Assembly: GCF_031769215.1 (NCBI RefSeq) | Contig: NW_026782116.1 | Location: forward strand, 1,612,001 to 1,676,000 | Reading direction: 5' to 3' | Source: Ylistrum balloti | Lineage: Eukaryota | Length of the DNA: 64,000 nucleotides | Shown: positions 3,401 to 16,914 of the stretch, one piece after another | How the letters are laid out: each line of letters starts with the position of its first letter | Position numbering within the stretch: position 1 is the stretch's first letter | Made by a program: the position numbers and the translations under genes | The notes under the pieces: generated by a model | What the model was told of the DNA's origin: nothing | Seen by the model: the letters and a program-made list of their open reading frames with translations, nothing else | The model's database searches: none

Positions 3401-4152
3401 CCATTATTGGGAGTGGGAACAACTTTCAACCAGTCAGCACTGTCAGCATCCTTTGCCTGTTACAATGGAAAATTCAAATACATCATCAAAACAAAGAATA
3501 TTTACATACATCAGATTCAAGAGTGACTAGACTGATATAAAACACAACCTTGTGTATATGAAACATTCATTTGTATGCATATTCTCGGATATAAGCACTT
3601 TGGTATTGATATACTTTCGCTTCAGCATGATAAACTGCAACCGATACCAAAAATTGAAAAAAGACCAAATATTTTTTCATGGCGTTAGATCAAGGATTTT
3701 TCGACACTTCCAACATCATACAAGAAACATCGCAAATGCCGGACAATCTCGAACAGTGTTTCGGTGTTTGTGACCATATGTTGGTCTGTGCCGGATGTAC
3801 TGACCACCATTATTTCAAAGATAACATCAAGGAAAACAACTAAAATTTGGTGGCGTAATCGAATGCGACAATATTTCATGATGATAAATACCTTTGAACA
3901 CGTAAATACACATCGGACGTCCACCGACCAAAGACAAAACAGCGAAGACAAAATCTGTAGAAATCCGATGAAAGCAAGTGCTATCAATCCGGCTTCATAG
4001 TATTCTTCAAGGCCATACACGCATGTCCAGCAGTAGAACCATACACTATACAACAGGACGAATGGTCCTATATACCCATGGAGTATCAATGGTCGTATGT
4101 TATAGCACGTAACTGACTGGACTTCTTCGTTTAAAGGTGTCGACGAGGCCAT
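421..4152 (-). CDS. ATP13A1: P5A-type ATPase ATP13A1/Spf1, 5' part. Coding exons 4152-3892, 3456-3367, 2720-2533, 649-421; gene continues beyond position 1
   Basis: Spliced frame is continuous with GT-AG boundaries: [10 protein letters not shown]...CSK / [30 protein letters not shown] / [13 protein letters not shown]...YGRN / [86 protein letters not shown] and [29 protein letters not shown] are ATP13A1 signature strings. Confidence 0.95.
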
Positions 4153-6324: not shown

Positions 6325-7367
6325 GGGTACACTTTCCACCTATTTAGTTAATTTGAACAGTTTAAACTACGGAGTCATCCACACAACCTTCAAATGCACA
6401 TATTCCGTAACACAAATCCGTATACACAAAAATGGATTAACTTTATTTTTATCACCACTCTGATATACATATGTAAGATCTAGTTGTCTATATTCTTTTC
6501 AAGGTATCTTTCCTTCACATTACACACTCTCATTTCTTGTTTTAACATGGTCGTAACGACATTTTTATTGCGTACTCACCAGTATCAAAATGTTGTGCAT
6601 GACGAAAGAGAACACTTAATTAACAAAAGTAAAAGTATTGCAGACTTCCATGAAAACTCAGACTTGGTGTTTAGTTTTAATATTATCACTTCTGTTGTAT
6701 ATGAACCAATAACGACAACCTATTCATAACTTTAGGTTCTGTTACTAATACGGCAGAATACAAAAGGAAATTGCTCGCGAGTTGTAATCCATCGTTATTC
6801 AAATCATTTGATATACCTCATATATGCAAACGTTTCCCTCCCAGCTCTGATCGACCGTGAAGTCGATATCGACATTTGAATCACCTTCTTTCATACAACA
6901 ACTTCAGATGATTTTGTCTCATAAGCGACCTTCGACGTCCATCGACCGAAGGGATTATCGAGACACCACCTTGTTTTACACTACCGTTCTCGATCTTCAT
7001 TTATAACTTTATAGTTGTTATATTTTTGATGTATGTTATGTAATTTACAAAAAAATGTATGTAATGTTCGTGTCTTGATAAAGGGGCAGATTGCCTCAAT
7101 TAATTTGTCCACACTATCGTTAACACTTCATATATCTCTGTTGGAGGTGTGTGCAAAGGTGGTAGGAGAAAGACATGAATACTCACTGATAACCCATAAA
7201 ACCCTAAACCAACCACTTTAATAAAGAGTATGACAAGGAAAAGTGAATGTGTCAAGTGGTTCCCACGTAAGCAGAATGCCACAACAAGATTGTACAAAAG
7301 GAGCACAACTAAATAGCATTTTAAAATACAAATTTAGAGTATATAGTAGAGCCGAATGATCAATTAA

Positions 7368-8495
7368 ACTGCATCATACAACTGTTTCGTCCTTCTAGGA
7401 CTCGTCAGTGATGCTACATCATACAGCTGTTTCGTCCTTCTAGGACTCGTCAGTGATGCTACATCATACAGCTGTTTCGTCCTTCTAGGTCTCGTCAGTG
7501 ATGCTACATCATACAGCTGTTTCGTCCTTCTAGGACTCGTCAATGATGCTACATCATACAGCTGTTTCGTCCTTCTAGGACTCGTCAGTGATGCTACACA
7601 ATACAGCTGTTTTGTCCTTCTAGGACTCGTCACAGCTGCTACATTATACAGCTGTTTCGTCCTCCTAGGACTCGTCAGTGATGCTACATCATACAGCTGT
7701 TTCGTCATCATTGGACTCGTCAGTGATGCTACACAATACGGCAGTGATGTTTACAGCTGTTTCGTCTAATTGGACTTTCAGTGATGCTACACAATACAGT
7801 TGTTCCGTCCTTCTAGGACTCGTCAGTGATGCTACATCATACAGCTGTTTCGTCCTCATTGGACTCGTCAGTGATGCTACATCATACAGCTGTTTCGTCA
7901 TCTGGACTCGTCAGTGATGCTACATCATACAGCTGTTTCGTCACTCGTCAGTGATGCTACATCATACAGCTGTTTCGTCCTTCTAGGACTCGTCAGTGAT
8001 GCTACATCATACAGCTGTTTCGTCCTTCTAGGACTCGTCACTGATGCTACATCATACAGCTGTTTCGTCATACAGCTGTTCGTCAGTGATGCTACACCTC
8101 CTCCTAGGACTCGTCAGTGATGCTACATCATACAGCTGTTTCGTCATCATTGGACTCGTCAGTGATGCTACACAATACGGCTGTTTCGTCCTTCTAGGAC
8201 TCGTCAGTGATGCTACATCATACAGCTGTTTCGTCCTCATTGGACTCGTCAGTGATGCTACACAATACAGTTGTTTCGTCCTTCTAGGACTCGTCAGTGA
8301 TGCTACATCATACAGCTGTTTCGTCCTCATTGGACTCGTCAGTGATGCTACACAATACAGCTGTTTCGTCCTTCTAGGACTCGTCACTGATGCTACATCA
8401 TACAGCTGTTTCGTCATCATTGGACTCGTCAGTGATGCTACACAATACAGCTGTTTCGTCCTTCTAGGACTCGTCAGTGATGCTAGATCATACAG
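7368..8495. repeat. 45-bp minisatellite, about 25 units
   Basis: Unit TGTTTCGTCCTTCTAGGACTCGTCAGTGATGCTACATCATACAGC, with some internally deleted units near 7720-7950 and 8060-8110. It accounts for the repetitive ORFs in the track. Confidence 0.95.
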
Positions 8496-8868
8496 CTGGT
8501 TCAGGAGGTGCACTAGTCCCATAGTTAAAAAATAGTTATTTCCATGTAAGAGACAATTTGAAAACGACGTCTTGTCAAAATGATTTTATGAAGTGTGATA
8601 TGATAGCTGTGGCGGGACTTTAGGATAAAACAGACGAGATTAACCCTTCCAGGACAGCTAGTCTCTTGCTATTTGTTTTTACTCATTGTTAAATTATTGT
8701 AAAATGAATCGAGAAAGTCGGAATGACTGTAATTCTCGTTTAGCAACTTGGTATGCGAGCTACACTGTTAAATGGTGACATTTGAAAACTTGGTAACTAT
8801 GCGAGCTACACTGTTAAACGATGACATTTGACAATTTGAACTAATATCAATCGTTAGTGATTACATAT

Positions 8869-9131: not shown

Positions 9132-11861
9132 CTAATGCAATTCATCGTTGGTACATAATTCATTAGTCGGCCTGATCTTTCTTGTGAGTGGTTCGAGTTT
9201 GTCCTCGTGAATGCTCCCACCTCTGTCCAGAATAGGCTGCAAATTAAAGTGCTTGAGCGACTTAGTAAGATCTGCACGTATTTGTTGTGTTTCACCCTCT
9301 GAACGCTCCTTAAACAAGTTCACATCCGGATAATCCGTGTGGAAATTGTACATAGGGAAATACTTCTCCAAACTTGGATTGTTGGCGAAGAATTGTGGGA
9401 GGTTTCTGTGTTCCAAAGAGGTGTCGATAATATGGACAAGGTGTTTGCATGCTGACGTCACGTTCGGCAAACGTACGTCATCGATCCATCTCAAATGTAA
9501 AATACCATGAAGGAGAGCATTTTTGATATGATAGGACGACAGCACGTGATGCAGTTGTGAGCTAGGATTCCTTTCGACGTCGTGTTCTCGAACGGCCTTA
9601 AGTATTCTGGCGCCTCTCACCAGACGCTGAGCGGTCAAATTGGTGGAAATCCATCTATCCAGAATACGCATTTCGAACTGAGAGTGGGACATACGCCAAG
9701 CCGTGTCTGGGTTAGGAATAGGCTCGACACGGTGATCATTTTGGGAACTCGGAACCCATCTTGAAACCATGAACTTTCTTAAGGTTGACCCATCTTTTCG
9801 AATGTTATATCCGGGCACCATGTCGATACTAATTCGATCGCCATTTACTGTAGCGTCTAGTTTGATGGCTGGTGCGGCCGCTTGGCGCTTGATGTTGAAG
9901 CTGGCAAATTCGGGGTTTTGATTCAACTTCTGTATAGCTGCGTCAATCCGTCCTTTGATCAACTGATCATGGAAAACTCTTGCATTAACATACTGCTTAC
10001 CGTCTCTTTCTACAAAAAGATTTTTCGGTTGAACGGTCATACGACTATTCACCTTATTGATCTCGATTTCACCCAGACCAGCGGGCAGGTTGTTGCTGGG
10101 CGATTCCTTAATGGTAGCGGTGGTTCCCAGGAAGGTGAAAGGGAGCACTACATCAAATTCATCTGCCGCTCCAACCTTTAGACCCTCTCTCGCACCTCCT
10201 TGCTTCACGAATGGTCGGAATCTCAGAAACTGGTGAGTTTTCTCGAGTGTCTTCAGTTCTTGGTACAGATTTTTCATTAGGCGACTGATTTCTACTTGAT
10301 TATTGTGAAAACTTGATTTCTCTATTTTAACGTATTTGTCGTGGAATGTCCTCAACGCTTTGTCTTCGGAACCAGACCATACCATGTCAGATCTAGCCGG
10401 AGGCTTCCAGTTGTTGGGCACACCAACATCGAAATAGATCTCTCCCGTGCTGTAAAAGAAATAACTTAACGCTGGAATAAGTCCATTAGATATCACATAT
10501 ACAAGTGCTACAATACATCATGTACACTAAAAATGAACTGCATACCTACATGCCCTAAGCTCTGCCGTTCGATCCCTCAAGAACTTTGTGATGGTTATAC
10601 AATAGTGTCTTTCACCTTGAAATGTTTCATAATACTCATAAAACACAAATGAATTTTTTGTTTTCGTAATTAATAAAATATTGTATGTATAAATTCTTAA
10701 GTAACGTTTGCGTTAAATTATCAACATTTGTTTTTGGCCATGGTTTTATTAGTTCTTATTCCAGTCTATAGAACCTCCTCACAAAAGGCCGACCTAGTTT
10801 TCATGAATAATTCATGAAAGATGATTGTTTTTGTGTTGAACGCATTGCTCGTGTTAGAAATGATTTCTTTAACTCGAACCTCGTTATCCGTCCCTTTATT
10901 CCATACGACATACCACTAGCTTTTAAAAGGACTGGACACGGTTCGCTAAGTACTACTGTTAATCTATAGAACAGATAATTGATATGCACTTCTGTAAACA
11001 GAGCTATTTGTTTTGTTTCTAAAACAAGAACAACAACAAAAAACAATAACGCTCGGCCTTTATCGCTCACATGACTTTGCACGGCTGTAATCGTTTCATC
11101 AAAACTAAAGGAAAAGAAATTCTAAATATCAAAGCACACAACACAACATATCTTTTTTTGCACTGGGACAACCTTTTTCCCGAGGGGGTTCGTCAGACCA
11201 TCCATGCTCCATTTGTTCTATCCTCCCTCCCTAGAGGGTAGACACCCGCCGATTTTATAAAATGATTCCCCTGCAAACAAGAATGCTTGGAAACAAATTT
11301 GAGCAAAATTCAATAATTCCTACAAGAGGTGTGGAGCCAAGGTCCACTGTTTACACAAAAGCCTTTTACTCCACCGTACAATGCTTTGGATTAAATTTTG
11401 GCAAAATTCAATAATTTCTACAGAAGGAATTTAAAGAATTGTGCTAAATATCCACCTTTTGGGGCTCGCACCTCACGCTCATGGGGTCCAAGACCTAATA
11501 TTTATAGAAACTTGGTTCCCCTCCTCCAATGTTCCTTCTCACCAAATTCCGTGCAGCCATTCATGACTAGAAGCGAGTTTAACAAGTTGACTGACGATGT
11601 ACGCCGCGCCATGGCGTAAGCTCACCAGTCCTTTGGACCAGATGAGATAAAAACGAAAGACATGAAGCCCAGGAGAAAAATATGGCTAATATTACCAACC
11701 AAACGACAAGTGTATAGCGTTGCATTAAAAAAATCTTCATTGAGAAAATATGTTTAAACCTCATATAACCCTATTAGAAATCCGTCATTACTTCCCGGTC
11801 AATATATAATGTCTGATTCTGTCCAAAATTACAATAATTAAGCTTAATCAACATACCACAT
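9132..11861 (-). CDS. cGAS-like receptor (cGLR; Mab-21/cGAS nucleotidyltransferase), about 440 aa. Exon 1 coding 11861-11857 (ATG TG), intron 11856-10450, exon 2 10449-9132
   Basis: Motifs: QGGAREGLKVGAADEFDVVL (G[G/S]-x11-EFD), third acidic residue in ISIDMVP, WRMSHSQFE, SSYHIKNALLH and LPQFF, all typical of cGAS/Mab-21 proteins. A strong acceptor TTTCTTTTACAG at 10450 lies inside the tracked ORF. The phase-2 donor ATGTG|GTATGT joins in frame (5+1318=1323 nt), giving MCTGEIYFDVG. Confidence 0.88.
11250..11655 (+). mobile_element. Non-autonomous Helentron/HINE-like interspersed repeat inside the cGLR intron; 5' boundary uncertain
   Basis: Ends in TACGCC...GGCGTA plus an imperfect hairpin AGCTCACCAGTCC-TTT-GGACCAGATGAGAT followed by an A-run, resembling bivalve HINE 3' termini (recalled, not searched). 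Confidence 0.55.
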
Positions 11862-11930
11862 GATTGTCTTCAGCTGCACTGCTGACGTGTCCCCAGCTGT
11901 ACGACAGACAGATCTACATGAGTCATTTAC

Positions 11931-11960
11931 ATATATAGCCTACAAATCGAAACCGAAACT
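11931..11960 (-). promoter_or_regulatory. cGLR promoter: ISRE AGTTTCGGTTTC (11960-11949), TATA-like TATATAT (11937-11931), nearby AP-1 heptamer TGAGTCA (11919-11925)
   Basis: Exact match to the IRF/ISRE consensus AGTTTCNNTTTC, 88 nt upstream of the proposed ATG. Confidence 0.7.
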
Positions 11961-13270
11961 ATGGTATTGCACGTAAGAGACCCGCTTTCAATAAACATAA
12001 AAACAATAGGGCCTATATGTGTGAAGACTGTAATACGCTTGTAGCGACCTTATTCTTGTTTGATATTGAACGAATTTGTTAAATAATCGGTACGTTATCT
12101 AAAATAGGATTGTGATGTATGATAGTATATCTAAGTAGTTGTGCGATCATTATTTTCTGAAATATAAATTAGGACACGATATCATATGGAAACGTGTTAT
12201 TAGTTCTTACTGTCACGATCCTTTTTCGCTTTTATGCTTACTTGTTCTATATCTCGGCATGTGACACAAATTCTTACGAAATAATCCCATTGTTACGCAT
12301 ACTGTATGTTATCATTATTGGTGACTATGGTGACCATGGGTCGTGTATGTGGTGCTGAATTTTTGGTTGAGGTTGCTTTGCTTTTGTAATAAAAGGAAGC
12401 ATATGAGAAAAAAAATCAGCGTTTCAATTTTGACAATACCTTTTATGTGTGTTCTTTGATGCATATCGAGTTAATTGTTAATTTGCGTTTAAGAAGGCCG
12501 GAATATCTATTTGAAATATCGATGTTACAGTTGTGTTGATCCCATCTGAGGTTGTTCTGTAATTCTGTAAATCCTCGAGTACCGTGAATTTGTCTAGTTG
12601 GAACTTCGTGTGACAATCCCATTCCAAATGTTCTTGTTGTACTTGTGTCGTCTTATGGTTTGTGTGTGTCGTACGCTGTCGTCGGTTTAAGAGTGTTGTA
12701 TATCTAAGGAAGTCGTTTATATTAGGATAGGTTCCTTAAGTCACAGGGATATTTTTGTGTTCTTAGCATGCATGTATTTAGCTATGTGTGTGGTGATATC
12801 ATTGGTAAGTAAGATTCATTGCTGGGATTTCTTTACTTGTGGTTTAACCCGACTGATATCTCAGGAAATAGTGTGAGAGGTGTATCATGTTCTCCAGCGC
12901 AAGCGTTGGGGGTATTGTTTCCTTTGTCTGTGGAAATGGTTTAGTTTTTTTTTGTCCAAAAATATGAGTGATAATGTAAACGTGATCGTTGAGGTTTTCT
13001 GATTTCTTAGCGTATCTATGCTTTATACCCCTAGGCGAAAGGTAAGATTGTGGACGTTTAAGCAATTGTTGTCAAACAGCTTCCACAAAACCCTTCCAAT
13101 ATTTAGCTCTTCAGTAGCGAAGATTTTCGTTCTCAATTCTAGCCATCTTCCTTTTCCACATTTATCTCCCTTTCCTGTATTCATCCTTCTTTTTCTGTCA
13201 TCATCTCAAACAATAGATAATGTTAATGTGTATAAAACTAAACCCATTAATCTGTGTTAATAGATAACCC

Positions 13271-13427: not shown

Positions 13428-13439
13428 CTTTGAGTATTG

Positions 13440-13880
13440 TACTTAGGAAATTAGTTCTGTAAACATGGATTTCTGGAAGCTTCCCGAAATCCAAAGAGGA
13501 GTCGATAATATGGACAAAGTGTTAGTATGACGTCACCATCGGCAAACTTGCGTCATCGATCTATCTCACATGTAAAATAACACAGAGAAAAGTATTCTTA
13601 ACATGATGACAATACGCGTGCAAGCTAGGAGTCCTTCCGATGTCATGTACTCGAATGGGTTTCACTTTTCTTGTGCCTGAGCTGTCAAAGTTCACATCTC
13701 GAACAGAGAGTGGACATATGCCACACCGTGTTTGAATTTAGGGGCAATTTAGTGAGTCATTTGGGGGGCATCTTTATAGTTAGCAGTTTGGCCAGGAATA
13801 TGTCGTATTTGAAAAGAGTTGAAGGATTCAATTTACATTCTTTTAGACACGTTGTAGCTGAACTTTGTCGTCAGCGGCCG
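13440..13880 (-). pseudogene. Decayed, 5'-truncated paralogue of the cGLR gene
   Basis: Collinear similarity to about 9360-9885 (e.g. TCCAAAGAGG.GTCGATAATATGGACAA, CGTCATCGAT, TGTAAAATA, GCGGCCG). Shows frameshifts and stops, e.g. TVWHMS-frameshift-SLFEM-TGA versus TAWRMSHSQFEMR. Confidence 0.88.
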
Positions 13881-13934: not shown

Positions 13935-13954
13935 CTACAAATCGAAACCGAAAC
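13935..13954 (-). promoter_or_regulatory. Second ISRE (GTTTCGGTTTC) upstream of the cGLR pseudogene
   Basis: The 20-mer CTACAAATCGAAACCGAAAC is identical to 11940-11959. Confidence 0.7.
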
Positions 13955-14339
13955 AGCAGCATTTGTAGGTAGGTAGGTAGGTAGGATATGATATGAACAG
14001 TTATCTTCCGTTATCTTACAGATAATCTACCTGTGTCACTAATTCGTTTCGCTTTCAGTAAGCTATCTTAACGACGGTTGTGGCTTATACTTTTACATAT
14101 CTAAATGCGATCGTATTCCAAGGTGTGCATGTTGGCAAATACCTGTAAATCAGAGCAAATAAAATGACGTTTGTGCAATACCAGAAATTGGCATTTGTCA
14201 CTTTACTAAATCCAAGGGGGTTACCAAATCCACGAGGTTTTCTGCGACTAACTCAGATTCTAAGGACTGAGAATTCACCAAATCTATTTATCCTCTTTAC
14301 CATTATGCTCCGACTATCAGAAATATAGAGGGAAAGAGC

Positions 14340-15323: not shown

Positions 15324-16914
15324 TATATTTAGGTTTCAGATAATAGTGCCTTGAAAATGAAATTTGATTGCCCTTGCTGAACTGGAAGAAATCAAATTTG
15401 ACAGGATGTCAAAGATCCTGCAATAAAAGCAAGCGGATCTAAATGCCTTTGACAAACTTCAAAGTTTACAGCATGACCCAAGACTCTCCACTTGTTATCT
15501 AAAGTTCTTCAAAGTCAATTGTTTTTATACATTTTCATATACTTTGGGTATGCAAACCACCATTGCTATATACATATTTCAAGAACATACAATGCACAAC
15601 AGAAAACTCACTTGACGTAGCCAAAGCGTTTTATTGACCATGACGTGTTGTATTAGAGGTCTATTCGTCAGACCAAACCAAACATTTTGGGAATGGCTCC
15701 TTATACAAAAAAGGTATACCAGGGCAGGTCCAATGCTCAACATCCATGGGATAAAAGTAATTCCACAGAAATCTGTCTGCCCACGATTATGTTCTACAAT
15801 AGTTAGGATTAGCATTGCTAGAGCATGTAACATTTGGACGAGCAAACATTCTATAGCATACCAGTAAGTGGACATCCCTGGTTGTCATAGAAACTCATCC
15901 CACATGTCCTATCAAAGTTCATCAGGCAAACACTGCACCTTGCATATTTCAGACATTATTATGCCTGTAAATGTGTTAAAACTTACTAACACAACAATGT
16001 TTTTCACACCAGTTCAAAATATTCCAGTAAAGCAATCAGCTTCTCTCTTCCTCAAAAAAAGTACTGAGGAGATGCAATTCAGAAAATATTTGGAATCATA
16101 CCATTTTTCATATAAAATTTCTGAGAAATTTTGCAAAATAACTATCAATCAATTACCAATATTGGTATGAATTCTGGAATATGTGCTGTATCAGTGTTTT
16201 TTTGCGAACTGTAACAAGACAGGGGTATATAATTGGACAGACAGACAGGCACTTGCTGGCTCACAAACAGGTGAAAAACAAATCAAACACAGGTAAACAA
16301 TTAGTAGGTACATGTACGTAATGTAACAAGTTACCCTAATATTTCAAGATTGTTCAAAGTCGGGCTAGATTTGTATTGTGTGCGTGAAAACTTATTCAGA
16401 AAACTGTTCTGATCAATTCATAAACCAAAAGAACTTTAAACAAATTTCACCATTCTAAATTACAATGAAAACTAAACATTTCCAAAATGTTCCTTAATCC
16501 CACTTCTGACACTAGGCAGACTTTGACAAATTATCTATGGAAAATGAACACTATCAATTTCTAGGATTAAGAGGACAATGCTTATTTTGATAATCGTTAC
16601 CTTACAATTATAATGAGGTGAGCAAAATCTTAACAAAAACGCACACAAATAAAGGAAAACTGCAGGAAAAATATCATACCCTAACCAAAAATTGATACAT
16701 TTATAGTGAGAGTAGTACAAAATTGTTGACTAGTAAAACTAAGTTAGACTCCTCTGAATAGCCATATAAATCCAAAGCCAGCAATAGCACAATATTAAAG
16801 TTTTGGACATCAGCTGTCTCTGTAAGGTAGATCAACATATACATCAATTTTATTGTCAATGTTATTCATTATATTTCTGTGATATATCATCTTAAACAAC
16901 AGTAAACCAATGAA

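What the first reader, a model, noticed from the sequence alone, without database searches (positions are those of the whole stretch)
11919..11960. Perfect ISRE beside a TATA-like box upstream of the cGLR: an interferon-stimulated-gene layout in an invertebrate
Seen: AGTTTCGGTTTC (minus, 11960-11949) sits 12 nt from TATATAT and 88 nt from the proposed ATG, with an AP-1 heptamer at 11919-11925. Established: this is the core of the vertebrate ISG15 ISRE bound by IRFs, and bivalves have IRF and STING genes and a poly(I:C)-inducible response. Inference: the receptor is itself IRF-induced, forming a feed-forward cGLR-STING-IRF loop. I noticed no other such element in the window except its duplicate at 13944.
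Basis: partly seen in the sequence, partly recalled or inferred. Interest (0 to 1): 0.8.

Follow-up and report, generated by a model that had tools for sequence, protein, structure and literature searches.

The report
Conserved IRF-type site in scallop cGLR promoter
A scallop cGAS-like immune sensor gene has a short interferon-response-type DNA element next to its TATA box; three scallop genera keep it almost unchanged, so it is very probably a working switch, but nobody has yet shown that immune transcription factors use it or that infection turns the gene on.

Summary
AGTTTCGGTTTC is at 11949-11960 (-), TATATAT follows after an 11-nt spacer, TGACTCA is at 11919-11925, and the ATG at 11861 starts a 5-nt first coding exon of a Mab-21/cGLR gene of the scallop Ylistrum balloti.

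The 12-mer alone is not beyond chance (1 found, 0.38 expected). Its conservation is:
- The only promoter sequence that still aligns between Ylistrum, Pecten maximus and Mizuhopecten yessoensis is the ISRE-to-TATA block.
- All specified bases of AANNGAAANNGAAAC are invariant, and the only substitution falls on an N position.
- mRNA contigs of two related scallops use the same 5-nt exon and begin about 25-35 nt after the TATA box.
- Tandem GAAA sites also lie upstream of other bivalve cGLR genes, about 22 times the background density.

The AP-1 heptamer is chance: it lies between TATA and the start site, is not conserved, and the motif is not enriched.

IRF binding, inducibility and a cGLR-STING-IRF loop remain untested, because no RNA run exists for this species. 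Published work fits the reading: scallop and oyster IRFs act on ISREs, oyster cGAS is poly(I:C)-induced, and vertebrate cGAS is an ISG. This is a new member of a known kind. Two sister notes from this scan on the same window (s1-244100, s1-244230) agree.

The parts
11949..11960 (-). ISRE-type 12-mer AGTTTCGGTTTC (GAAACCGAAACT on the + strand), identical to the human ISG15 ISRE core
   Evidence: ISG15 probe sequence in PMC9907019
11945..11959 (+). Extended tandem IRF-type site AATCGAAACCGAAAC (AANNGAAANNGAAAC). All specified bases are invariant in three scallop genera.
   Evidence: 2 in window, 0.11 expected; alignment A1
11931..11959 (-). Conserved ISRE-spacer-TATA block, the only promoter stretch alignable between Ylistrum and Mizuhopecten
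   Evidence: blastn; 20 of 25 columns invariant against a background of 2-9 per 25 upstream, 0 of 20000 permutations
11931..11937 (-). TATA box: TATATAT(G) here, TATATAAA in Pecten, TATAAATA in Mizuhopecten
11919..11925 (-). AP-1-like heptamer TGACTCA, judged a chance match. It lies between the TATA box and the inferred start site.
11900..11915 (-). Inferred transcription start zone, 25-35 nt downstream of the TATA box. An Inr-like TCAT is conserved here in the relatives.
   Evidence: mRNA contigs L003 and L006 aligned to the promoters, A3; inference by homology, no reads from this species
11881..11890 (-). Conserved ACACGTCAGC box in the 5'UTR, present in all three genomes and both relatives' mRNAs
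11857..11861 (-). 5-nt first coding exon ATGTG, followed by a GTATGT donor
10450..11856 (-). Intron 1. It does not align to the orthologs. The stretch 11020-11650 is repetitive and holds the first exon of NCBI's alternative model.
9132..10449 (-). Exon 2 of the cGLR (Mab-21 NTase plus Mab-21_C). The spliced product is 440 aa and starts MCTGEIYFD.
13935..13954 (-). Exact 20-nt copy of the ISRE and spacer, upstream of the dead cGLR copy
14046..14056 (+). Third ISRE core GTTTCGCTTTC, inverted, 92 nt upstream of the 13944 copy
13436..13734 (-). Remnant of a tandem cGLR duplicate, homologous to the C-terminal third of the gene and about 71% identical in DNA

Best explanation
This is a functional, selectively maintained cis-regulatory module in the core promoter of a scallop cGAS-like receptor gene. 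A tandem IRF-type site (AANNGAAANNGAAAC, ISRE/IRF-E class, reversed relative to the gene) sits 11 nt upstream of a canonical TATA box, at about -35 to -55 from the start site.

Most likely mechanism: one or more scallop IRF proteins bind the two GAAA half-sites and help the TATA-bound initiation complex, so that cGLR transcription follows IRF activity. It would then rise after viral nucleic-acid sensing, as cGAS does in vertebrates.

Shown here: the sequence, its position, its conservation, the gene structure, and the recurrence of such sites at other bivalve cGLR genes.
Inferred: the start site (by homology), IRF as the binding factor, inducibility, and any closed loop through STING.
For: - Motif and layout are as described.
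- Orthologs in Pecten maximus and Mizuhopecten yessoensis lie in the same gene order, with Ro60 upstream in both and the P5A-ATPase downstream called in Pecten. Both carry GTTTCG[G/C]TTTCGATT..TGTAGGCTATA at the same distance from the ATG.
- The only substitution in the site is at an N position of the consensus.
- By blastn this block is the only promoter homology left between Ylistrum and Mizuhopecten. The Ylistrum-Pecten promoter-proximal homology starts exactly at the ISRE, apart from one 26-nt match at 12151-12176. The intron is unalignable.
- It is the most conserved 25-column window of the 350-column alignment, with 0 of 20000 permutations matching it.
- Spliced mRNA contigs of two relatives use ATGTG|exon 2 and begin 25-35 nt after the TATA box.
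- GAAANNGAAA lies within 300 nt upstream of the ATG in the ortholog group, the scallop paralog group, a distant Mizuhopecten cGLR and a Potamilus cGLR, but not in Dreissena. Background density is 1 per 6.6 kb. P is about 4e-4 for 3 of 4 lineages not used to find the motif; this test is post hoc.
- The sequence equals the ISG15 ISRE used in IRF1 band-shift assays (PMC9907019).
- Oyster IRF2 and IRF8 activate an ISRE reporter (PMC5557890). Scallop CfIRF1 and CfIRF2 bind ISREs (cited in PMC13524488).
- Oyster cGAS rises 13-fold after poly(I:C) (PMC8218723). Vertebrate cGAS and STING are ISGs (PMC7198750).
Against: - There are no expression, start-site or binding data for this gene in any scallop. 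No RNA run holds it, and the one run laid on it is DNA.
- The bare 12-mer is not rarer than chance in the window.
- The T of GAAACT and the 5' purine of the 14-nt vertebrate ISRE consensus are not conserved or not met.
- The spacer TGTAGGC is equally conserved and an IRF site does not explain it, so another factor may share the block.
- The Dreissena cGLR and one Mizuhopecten paralog lack an exact site.
- The enrichment test used a window and motif chosen after looking, and the start sites of the distant genes are unknown.
- NCBI's model for this gene starts at a different exon.
Confidence: 0.6

Rival explanations
1. The block is a functional, conserved promoter element, but it does not work as an infection-inducible IRF switch. 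Either a different factor that reads GAAA repeats binds it (for example a PRDM1/Blimp-like repressor or an unknown mollusc factor), or an IRF binds constitutively and sets basal or haemocyte-specific expression. In either case there is no feed-forward loop.
For: - Conservation proves constraint, not the identity of the binding factor.
- The conserved block extends through the spacer TGTAGGC, which the IRF consensus does not explain.
- The ISGF3-type T of GAAACT is not conserved.
- From general knowledge, vertebrate IRF1, IRF2 and IRF8 also maintain basal and lineage-specific genes through the same sites.
Against: - All 11 specified bases of the tandem IRF consensus are invariant, and the single change falls on an N position.
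- Bivalve IRFs act on this very class of site.
- A bivalve cGAS homolog is induced by poly(I:C).
- Similar sites recur at other cGLR genes.
Confidence: 0.28
2. The motif is a chance match with no function. Its apparent conservation reflects a slowly evolving core promoter, or gene conversion between the live and dead copies.
For: - One AGTTTCNNTTTC in 64 kb is within chance.
- A second individual shows no variant in the element, but at about 1 SNP per 150 nt that says little.
- The 20-mer identity with the dead copy could come from gene conversion.
Against: - The three genera keep the site while the flanks and intron are randomised.
- The chance of a random 15-mer match at the same promoter position in two further species is about 1e-8 (my estimate from base composition).
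- The substitution pattern follows the consensus.
- Gene conversion inside Ylistrum cannot explain the Pecten and Mizuhopecten copies.
Confidence: 0.04
3. The real promoter is elsewhere. Transcription would start near 11650 at the first exon of NCBI's 481-aa model (MARRTSS..., about 11610-11540), leaving the ISRE-TATA block as a distal or relic element.
For: NCBI's model for LOC132549840 (P0001) uses that exon and a longer exon 2.
Against: - That exon lies in a stretch with 3- to 10-fold excess contig depth and many partial contigs, so it is a repeat. Its only match in Pecten is at an unrelated place.
- Both ortholog models and two relatives' mRNA contigs use the ATGTG exon.
- The ATGTG model gives a 440-aa protein collinear with the orthologs.
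Confidence: 0.08

Closest known systems
Vertebrate ISRE of ISG promoters (ISG15 type), and the ISRE-driven induction of vertebrate cGAS and STING (positive feedback, Ma et al. 2015, cited in PMC7198750)
   Same: The core is the identical 12-mer GAAACCGAAACT (PMC9907019). It sits in a proximal promoter. The gene is a cGAS-family sensor, so the proposed logic (the sensor is itself a target of the response) matches vertebrate cGAS.
   Different: No interferon or ISGF3 is known in scallops. The ISGF3-preferred T and the 5' purine are not conserved. Only the IRF-type core AANNGAAANNGAAAC is constrained, which points to direct IRF control rather than JAK-STAT control. Binding and induction are untested here.
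Invertebrate IRF targets: the shrimp Vago4/5 promoters (PMC4602278), the oyster CgIFNLP promoter, and ISRE reporters driven by oyster and scallop IRFs (PMC5557890; PMC13524488)
   Same: An invertebrate IRF acts through an ISRE-type site in a promoter of an antiviral-pathway gene, including bivalve IRFs.
   Different: Those cases have binding or reporter data but, as far as I found, no cross-genus footprint. This case has the footprint but no experiment, and the target is a cGLR. Full-text searches of the held library gave eight papers holding both words; by title and abstract none concerns an invertebrate cGLR promoter, and I did not read their text.
Oyster CgcGAS (PMC8218723)
   Same: A bivalve Mab-21/cGAS homolog whose mRNA rises 13-fold after poly(I:C). 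It belongs to a proposed cGAS/STING-TBK1-IRF axis.
   Different: It is a different, zinc-finger-bearing paralog (590 aa). Its promoter was not analysed in that paper. The scallop gene here belongs to a small clade seen almost only in scallops: the nearest non-scallop-type relatives are at most 36% identical.

Membership tests
ISRE / IRF-E (tandem IRF-binding element) | Sequence match to GAAANNGAAAC(T), i.e. two AANNGAAA IRF core units in tandem | tested here: met
   AATCGAAACCGAAACT at 11945-11960. The 5' purine of the 14-nt vertebrate consensus RNGAAANNGAAACT is not met.
ISRE / IRF-E (tandem IRF-binding element) | Located in the promoter-proximal region of a Pol II gene | tested here: met
   It lies 11 nt upstream of a conserved TATA box. 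mRNA contigs of two relatives begin 25-35 nt after the TATA box. The start site in Ylistrum itself is inferred.
ISRE / IRF-E (tandem IRF-binding element) | Evolutionary constraint on the specified bases | tested here: met
   All specified bases are invariant in three genera and the one change is at an N position. It is the top conserved window.
ISRE / IRF-E (tandem IRF-binding element) | Bound by an IRF-family protein (or ISGF3) | not testable with these tools
   Only indirect evidence exists: bivalve IRFs act on vertebrate ISREs (PMC5557890; PMC13524488).
Interferon-stimulated-gene-like (infection-inducible) gene | mRNA induced by virus, dsRNA, cyclic dinucleotide or an IFN-like signal | not testable with these tools
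   No RNA run holds the gene, and the run laid on it is genomic DNA. The oyster CgcGAS induction concerns another gene.
cGAS-like receptor (cGLR, Mab-21 nucleotidyltransferase) | Mab-21 NTase core plus C-terminal helical domain | tested here: met
   Pfam PF03281 (36.1 bits, cut-off 24.1) and PF20266 (24.9 bits, cut-off 24.1). There is a weak match to the solved Mab-21 domain-containing protein 7lt2 (from memory, an insect cGLR) over the GS-loop region.
cGAS-like receptor (cGLR, Mab-21 nucleotidyltransferase) | G[S/G] loop and the acidic catalytic residues [DE]h[DE]...[DE] | tested here: inconclusive
   GGARE at residue 86, DEFD at 98 and SIDMVPG at 209 are present. They were placed by eye and by the 7lt2 alignment, not by a structure model. 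Enzyme activity and ligand are unknown.
AP-1 site (TRE) as a functional promoter element | TGASTCA conserved in the orthologous promoters and placed upstream of the core promoter | tested here: not met
   It is TGACTCG in Pecten and absent in Mizuhopecten, lies between the TATA box and the start site, and occurs 9 times in the window against 14 expected.

The most novel reading that the evidence does not exclude
Direct IRF control of cGLR transcription would be an old, family-wide design in bivalves: a pre-interferon 'ISG' regulon in which the sensors are themselves response genes. The ISRE-TATA module would have been kept since before the pectinid genera split, and related tandem GAAA sites would be retained or re-evolved at paralogous cGLR promoters as far away as unionid mussels. 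On this reading the vertebrate cGAS positive-feedback logic predates interferon.
Probability: 0.3. Interest if true: 0.65.

Novelty: new member of a known kind. Interest (0 to 1): 0.48.

Why it matters
Bivalves have very large cGLR and STING repertoires, IRFs, and a poly(I:C)-inducible antiviral state, but no interferon. How their sensor genes are wired is largely unknown. This finding gives a 15-nt site that is sharply defined and conserved across genera, next to a TATA box. That makes a concrete test possible: mutate two GAAA half-sites, add a scallop IRF, and measure. A positive result would show that sensor amplification driven by IRFs is shared between molluscs and vertebrates. It would also give a compact inducible promoter for bivalve work. 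As a side result, the public gene model for this Ylistrum gene probably has the wrong first exon.

Tried and rejected
- RNA evidence in this species. The run search returned one holder only. When laid on the stretch it proved to be genomic DNA of another individual, contiguous across the intron with SNPs about every 150 nt. There is therefore no start-site or expression data. It did show no variant in 11919-11960 and exposed the intron repeat.
- Strict core GTTTCNNTTTC in the paralog loci L005, L007 and L008. There were no promoter hits. Relaxing to GAAANNGAAA and aligning the promoters revealed degenerate or exact sites.
- Deeper orthologs. The exhaustive protein search found only 89 relatives, none above 36% identity outside the two scallop groups. 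The two closest (P0010, P0011) exist only as transcript contigs without promoters. Three genomic but distant cGLR loci were examined instead.
- AP-1 as part of the module. Rejected.
- GAAAAGTGAAAC at 13659-13670 as another IRF site. Rejected, because it lies inside the coding-derived part of the dead copy and Pecten has a similar GAAAGTGAAAC inside its live coding exon.
- The conserved 1-kb block at 15598-16670 as a hidden gene. Six-frame comparison showed no frame preference, so it is noncoding.
- PDB sequence search for the protein. Nothing at E below 1e-3, and only a weak hit to 7lt2.
- No structure was predicted, because the finding concerns the promoter.

Full report
**Where we are**

The window is from the scallop Ylistrum balloti. 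The 454-aa ORF at 9132-10496 (-) carries Mab-21 and Mab-21_C domains above Pfam's cut-offs. It is 100% identical to NCBI's LOC132549840.

**The observation**

On the minus strand the sequence reads AGTTTCGGTTTC (11960-11949). An 11-nt spacer GATTTGTAGGC follows, then TATATAT (11937-11931), then TGACTCA (11925-11919), and later ATG at 11861 followed by TG and a GTATGT donor. All coordinates in the finding are right. The spacer is 11 nt, not 12.

The chance figures are these:
- AGTTTCNNTTTC occurs once against 0.38 expected, and 32 of 100 shuffles have at least one. The 12-mer alone proves nothing.
- The full tandem IRF pattern AANNGAAANNGAAAC occurs twice, at 11945 and 13940, against 0.11 expected.
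All three lie within 2.2 kb upstream of the cGLR.
- TGACTCA occurs 9 times against 14 expected.

The 12-mer is indeed the ISG15 ISRE core. The standard ISG15 probe is GATCGGGAAAGGGAAACCGAAACTGAA (PMC9907019; also PMC2212491).

**Gene structure and start site**

The orthologs in Pecten maximus (P0003) and Mizuhopecten yessoensis (P0002) begin MCTGEIYFD. That is exactly what ATGTG (11861-11857) spliced to CACGGG... at 10449 encodes. The joined Ylistrum CDS is 1323 nt and gives 440 aa without internal stops, 79-80% identical to the orthologs.

RNA-seq contigs of two further related species (L003/L004 and L006) read ...ATGTG|TACGGG and ...ATGTG|CACGGG. They carry at least 57 and at least 49 nt of 5'UTR. 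Aligned to the three genomic promoters, these contigs begin 25-35 nt downstream of the TATA box, at a conserved Inr-like TCAT.

For Ylistrum this places the start near 11905-11915. This is an inference by homology, because there are no reads from this species.

NCBI's 481-aa Ylistrum model uses another first exon (MARRTSS..., about 11610-11540). That exon lies in a stretch with 3- to 10-fold excess contig depth and many partial contigs, so it is a repeat. Its only Pecten match is at an unrelated place. I take that model to be wrong at its 5' end.

**Conservation**

The Pecten and Mizuhopecten genes lie in the same gene order, with Ro60 upstream in both and the P5A-ATPase downstream called in Pecten. 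In both, GTTTCG[G/C]TTTCGATT..TGTAGGCTATA[T/A]A lies at the same distance from the ATG: the motif starts at -97, -96 and -107.

- By blastn, Ylistrum-Pecten promoter-proximal homology is 11959-11830, starting exactly at the ISRE; the only other match upstream is 26 nt at 12151-12176.
- Ylistrum-Mizuhopecten homology is 11959-11931, the ISRE-to-TATA block alone.
- The 1.4-kb intron does not align, while the coding exon is 80% identical.
- The block is the most conserved 25-column window of the 350-column alignment. It has 20 invariant columns, and four of the other five are a 4-nt insertion in Mizuhopecten. Bins upstream of it have 2-9. None of 20000 permutations matches it.
- The one substitution inside the site (GG to GC) falls on the NN position of the consensus. 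The conserved GATT flank supplies the AA of the second AANNGAAA unit.
- The AP-1 heptamer is TGACTCG in Pecten and absent in Mizuhopecten.
- A second individual of Ylistrum shows no variant in 11919-11960.

**Other cGLR promoters**

In the paralog group (P0006, P0007, P0008; 48-56% identical) the first coding exon is also tiny: ATGGCG[G/A]ACAG followed by GT. A conserved block TCTACTTT[C/T]GG[T/A]TT(T)CGTT lies 60-85 nt upstream, and it is a partly degenerate ISRE. L007 adds an exact TTTCGGTTTC at -111, and Ylistrum L005 has GAAAACGAAA at -63.

- A distant Mizuhopecten cGLR (L013) has GAAACTGAAA at -268.
- A Potamilus cGLR (L015) has GAAAATGAAACT at -219.
- A Dreissena cGLR (L014) has none.

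Outside these 300-nt windows the motif density is 31 in 204.8 kb, or 1 per 6.6 kb. Inside them there are 9 hits in 2.7 kb. For the four lineages that were not the source of the finding, 3 of 4 positive has P of about 4e-4. This test is post hoc, and the start sites of the distant genes are unknown, so I count it as supportive only.

**The duplicate**

The stretch 13436-13734 (-) is a remnant of a tandem cGLR copy, 71% identical in DNA to the C-terminal third of the live gene. About 200 nt upstream lies an exact 20-mer, GTTTCGGTTTCGATTTGTAG (13954-13935). At 29% divergence a neutral run of 20 identities is unlikely: about 0.001 per position by my estimate. Selection as a distal element or gene conversion could each explain it. 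I did not resolve this.

**Mechanism**

Established for the families involved:
- IRFs bind tandem AANNGAAA units.
- Oyster IRF2 and IRF8 drive human ISRE and IFN-beta reporters and are induced by poly(I:C) (PMC5557890).
- Scallop CfIRF1 and CfIRF2 bind ISREs, and oyster CgIRF1 binds an ISRE and activates the CgIFNLP promoter (as summarised in PMC13524488).
- Oyster CgcGAS mRNA rises 13-fold after poly(I:C) within a proposed cGAS/STING-TBK1-IRF axis (PMC8218723).
- Vertebrate cGAS and STING are ISGs in a positive feedback (PMC7198750 citing Ma et al. 2015).

My reading is that a scallop IRF bound at about -35 to -55 cooperates with the TATA-bound machinery, so that cGLR mRNA follows IRF activity.

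The steps that remain inference are the identity of the factor, induction as opposed to basal or haemocyte-specific expression, and closure of the loop through STING. It is a lead that I did not test.

**Comparison and novelty**

ISRE-type control by invertebrate IRFs is known, for example shrimp Vago (PMC4602278) and oyster IFNLP. So are the inducibility of a bivalve cGAS homolog and the ISG status of vertebrate cGAS. My full-text searches for an ISRE in an invertebrate cGLR promoter gave eight papers holding both words; judged by title and abstract, none concerns such a promoter, and I did not read their text. This is therefore a new, well-footprinted member of a known kind. It is not a new kind of system.

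The layout is what a specialist would expect, and the functional claims are untested. The cross-genus footprint does make it an unusually clean experimental target.

**Limits**

Noticed in passing
window 11540-11610 (-), within 11020-11650: The first exon of NCBI's 481-aa model for LOC132549840 (MARRTSS...) lies in a repetitive intron segment with contig depth 32-166 against 12-16 elsewhere. The orthologs and the relatives' mRNAs do not use it, so the public model probably has a wrong 5' end.
   Followed up: partly
window 11881-11890 (-); L005 about 11246-11256: A conserved ACACGTCAGC box sits in the 5'UTR in all three scallop genomes and both relatives' mRNAs. The Ylistrum paralog promoter carries its exact reverse complement, GCTGACGTGTC. 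This may be a bZIP/CRE-like or E-box-like site that works in either orientation.
   Followed up: no
window 15598-16670: About 1 kb of noncoding sequence between Ro60 and the cGLR is conserved at 70-75% in Pecten (L001 7841-8883) and Mizuhopecten (L002 169-1132), with no reading-frame preference. It could be a long Ro60 3'UTR, a lncRNA or a regulatory region.
   Followed up: partly
window 13745-13780 (-): The dead cGLR copy also keeps CTATAAAG and AAATGACTCA, which resemble the live TATA-to-AP-1-like stretch. They lie about 160 nt downstream of its ISRE 20-mer, which suggests an insertion split the old promoter. The aligner did not bridge the gap.
   Followed up: partly
window 7364-8535: A long tandem repeat just downstream of the cGLR 3' end gives open frames on both strands, with repeated TSPRRTKQLYDVASL-like units.
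   Followed up: no
L005 11130-11220; L007 5870-5905; L008 same region: The paralog cGLR promoters share a twice-repeated TT(C/T)CAGAAA motif upstream of their ISRE-like block. It resembles a STAT-type half-palindrome but does not fit TTCNNNGAA.
   Followed up: no
L013 9522-9537: A triple repeat GAAACCGAAACCGAAA lies 4 kb downstream of a distant Mizuhopecten cGLR, at the edge of the fetched locus. It may belong to the promoter of the next gene.
   Followed up: no
L015 about 3868-3885 versus L005 about 11218-11235: The Potamilus cGLR upstream region contains TCTACTTTCGCTTT, which shares the 10-mer TCTACTTTCG with the ISRE-like block of the scallop paralog promoters. This may be coincidence or very deep conservation.
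   Followed up: no
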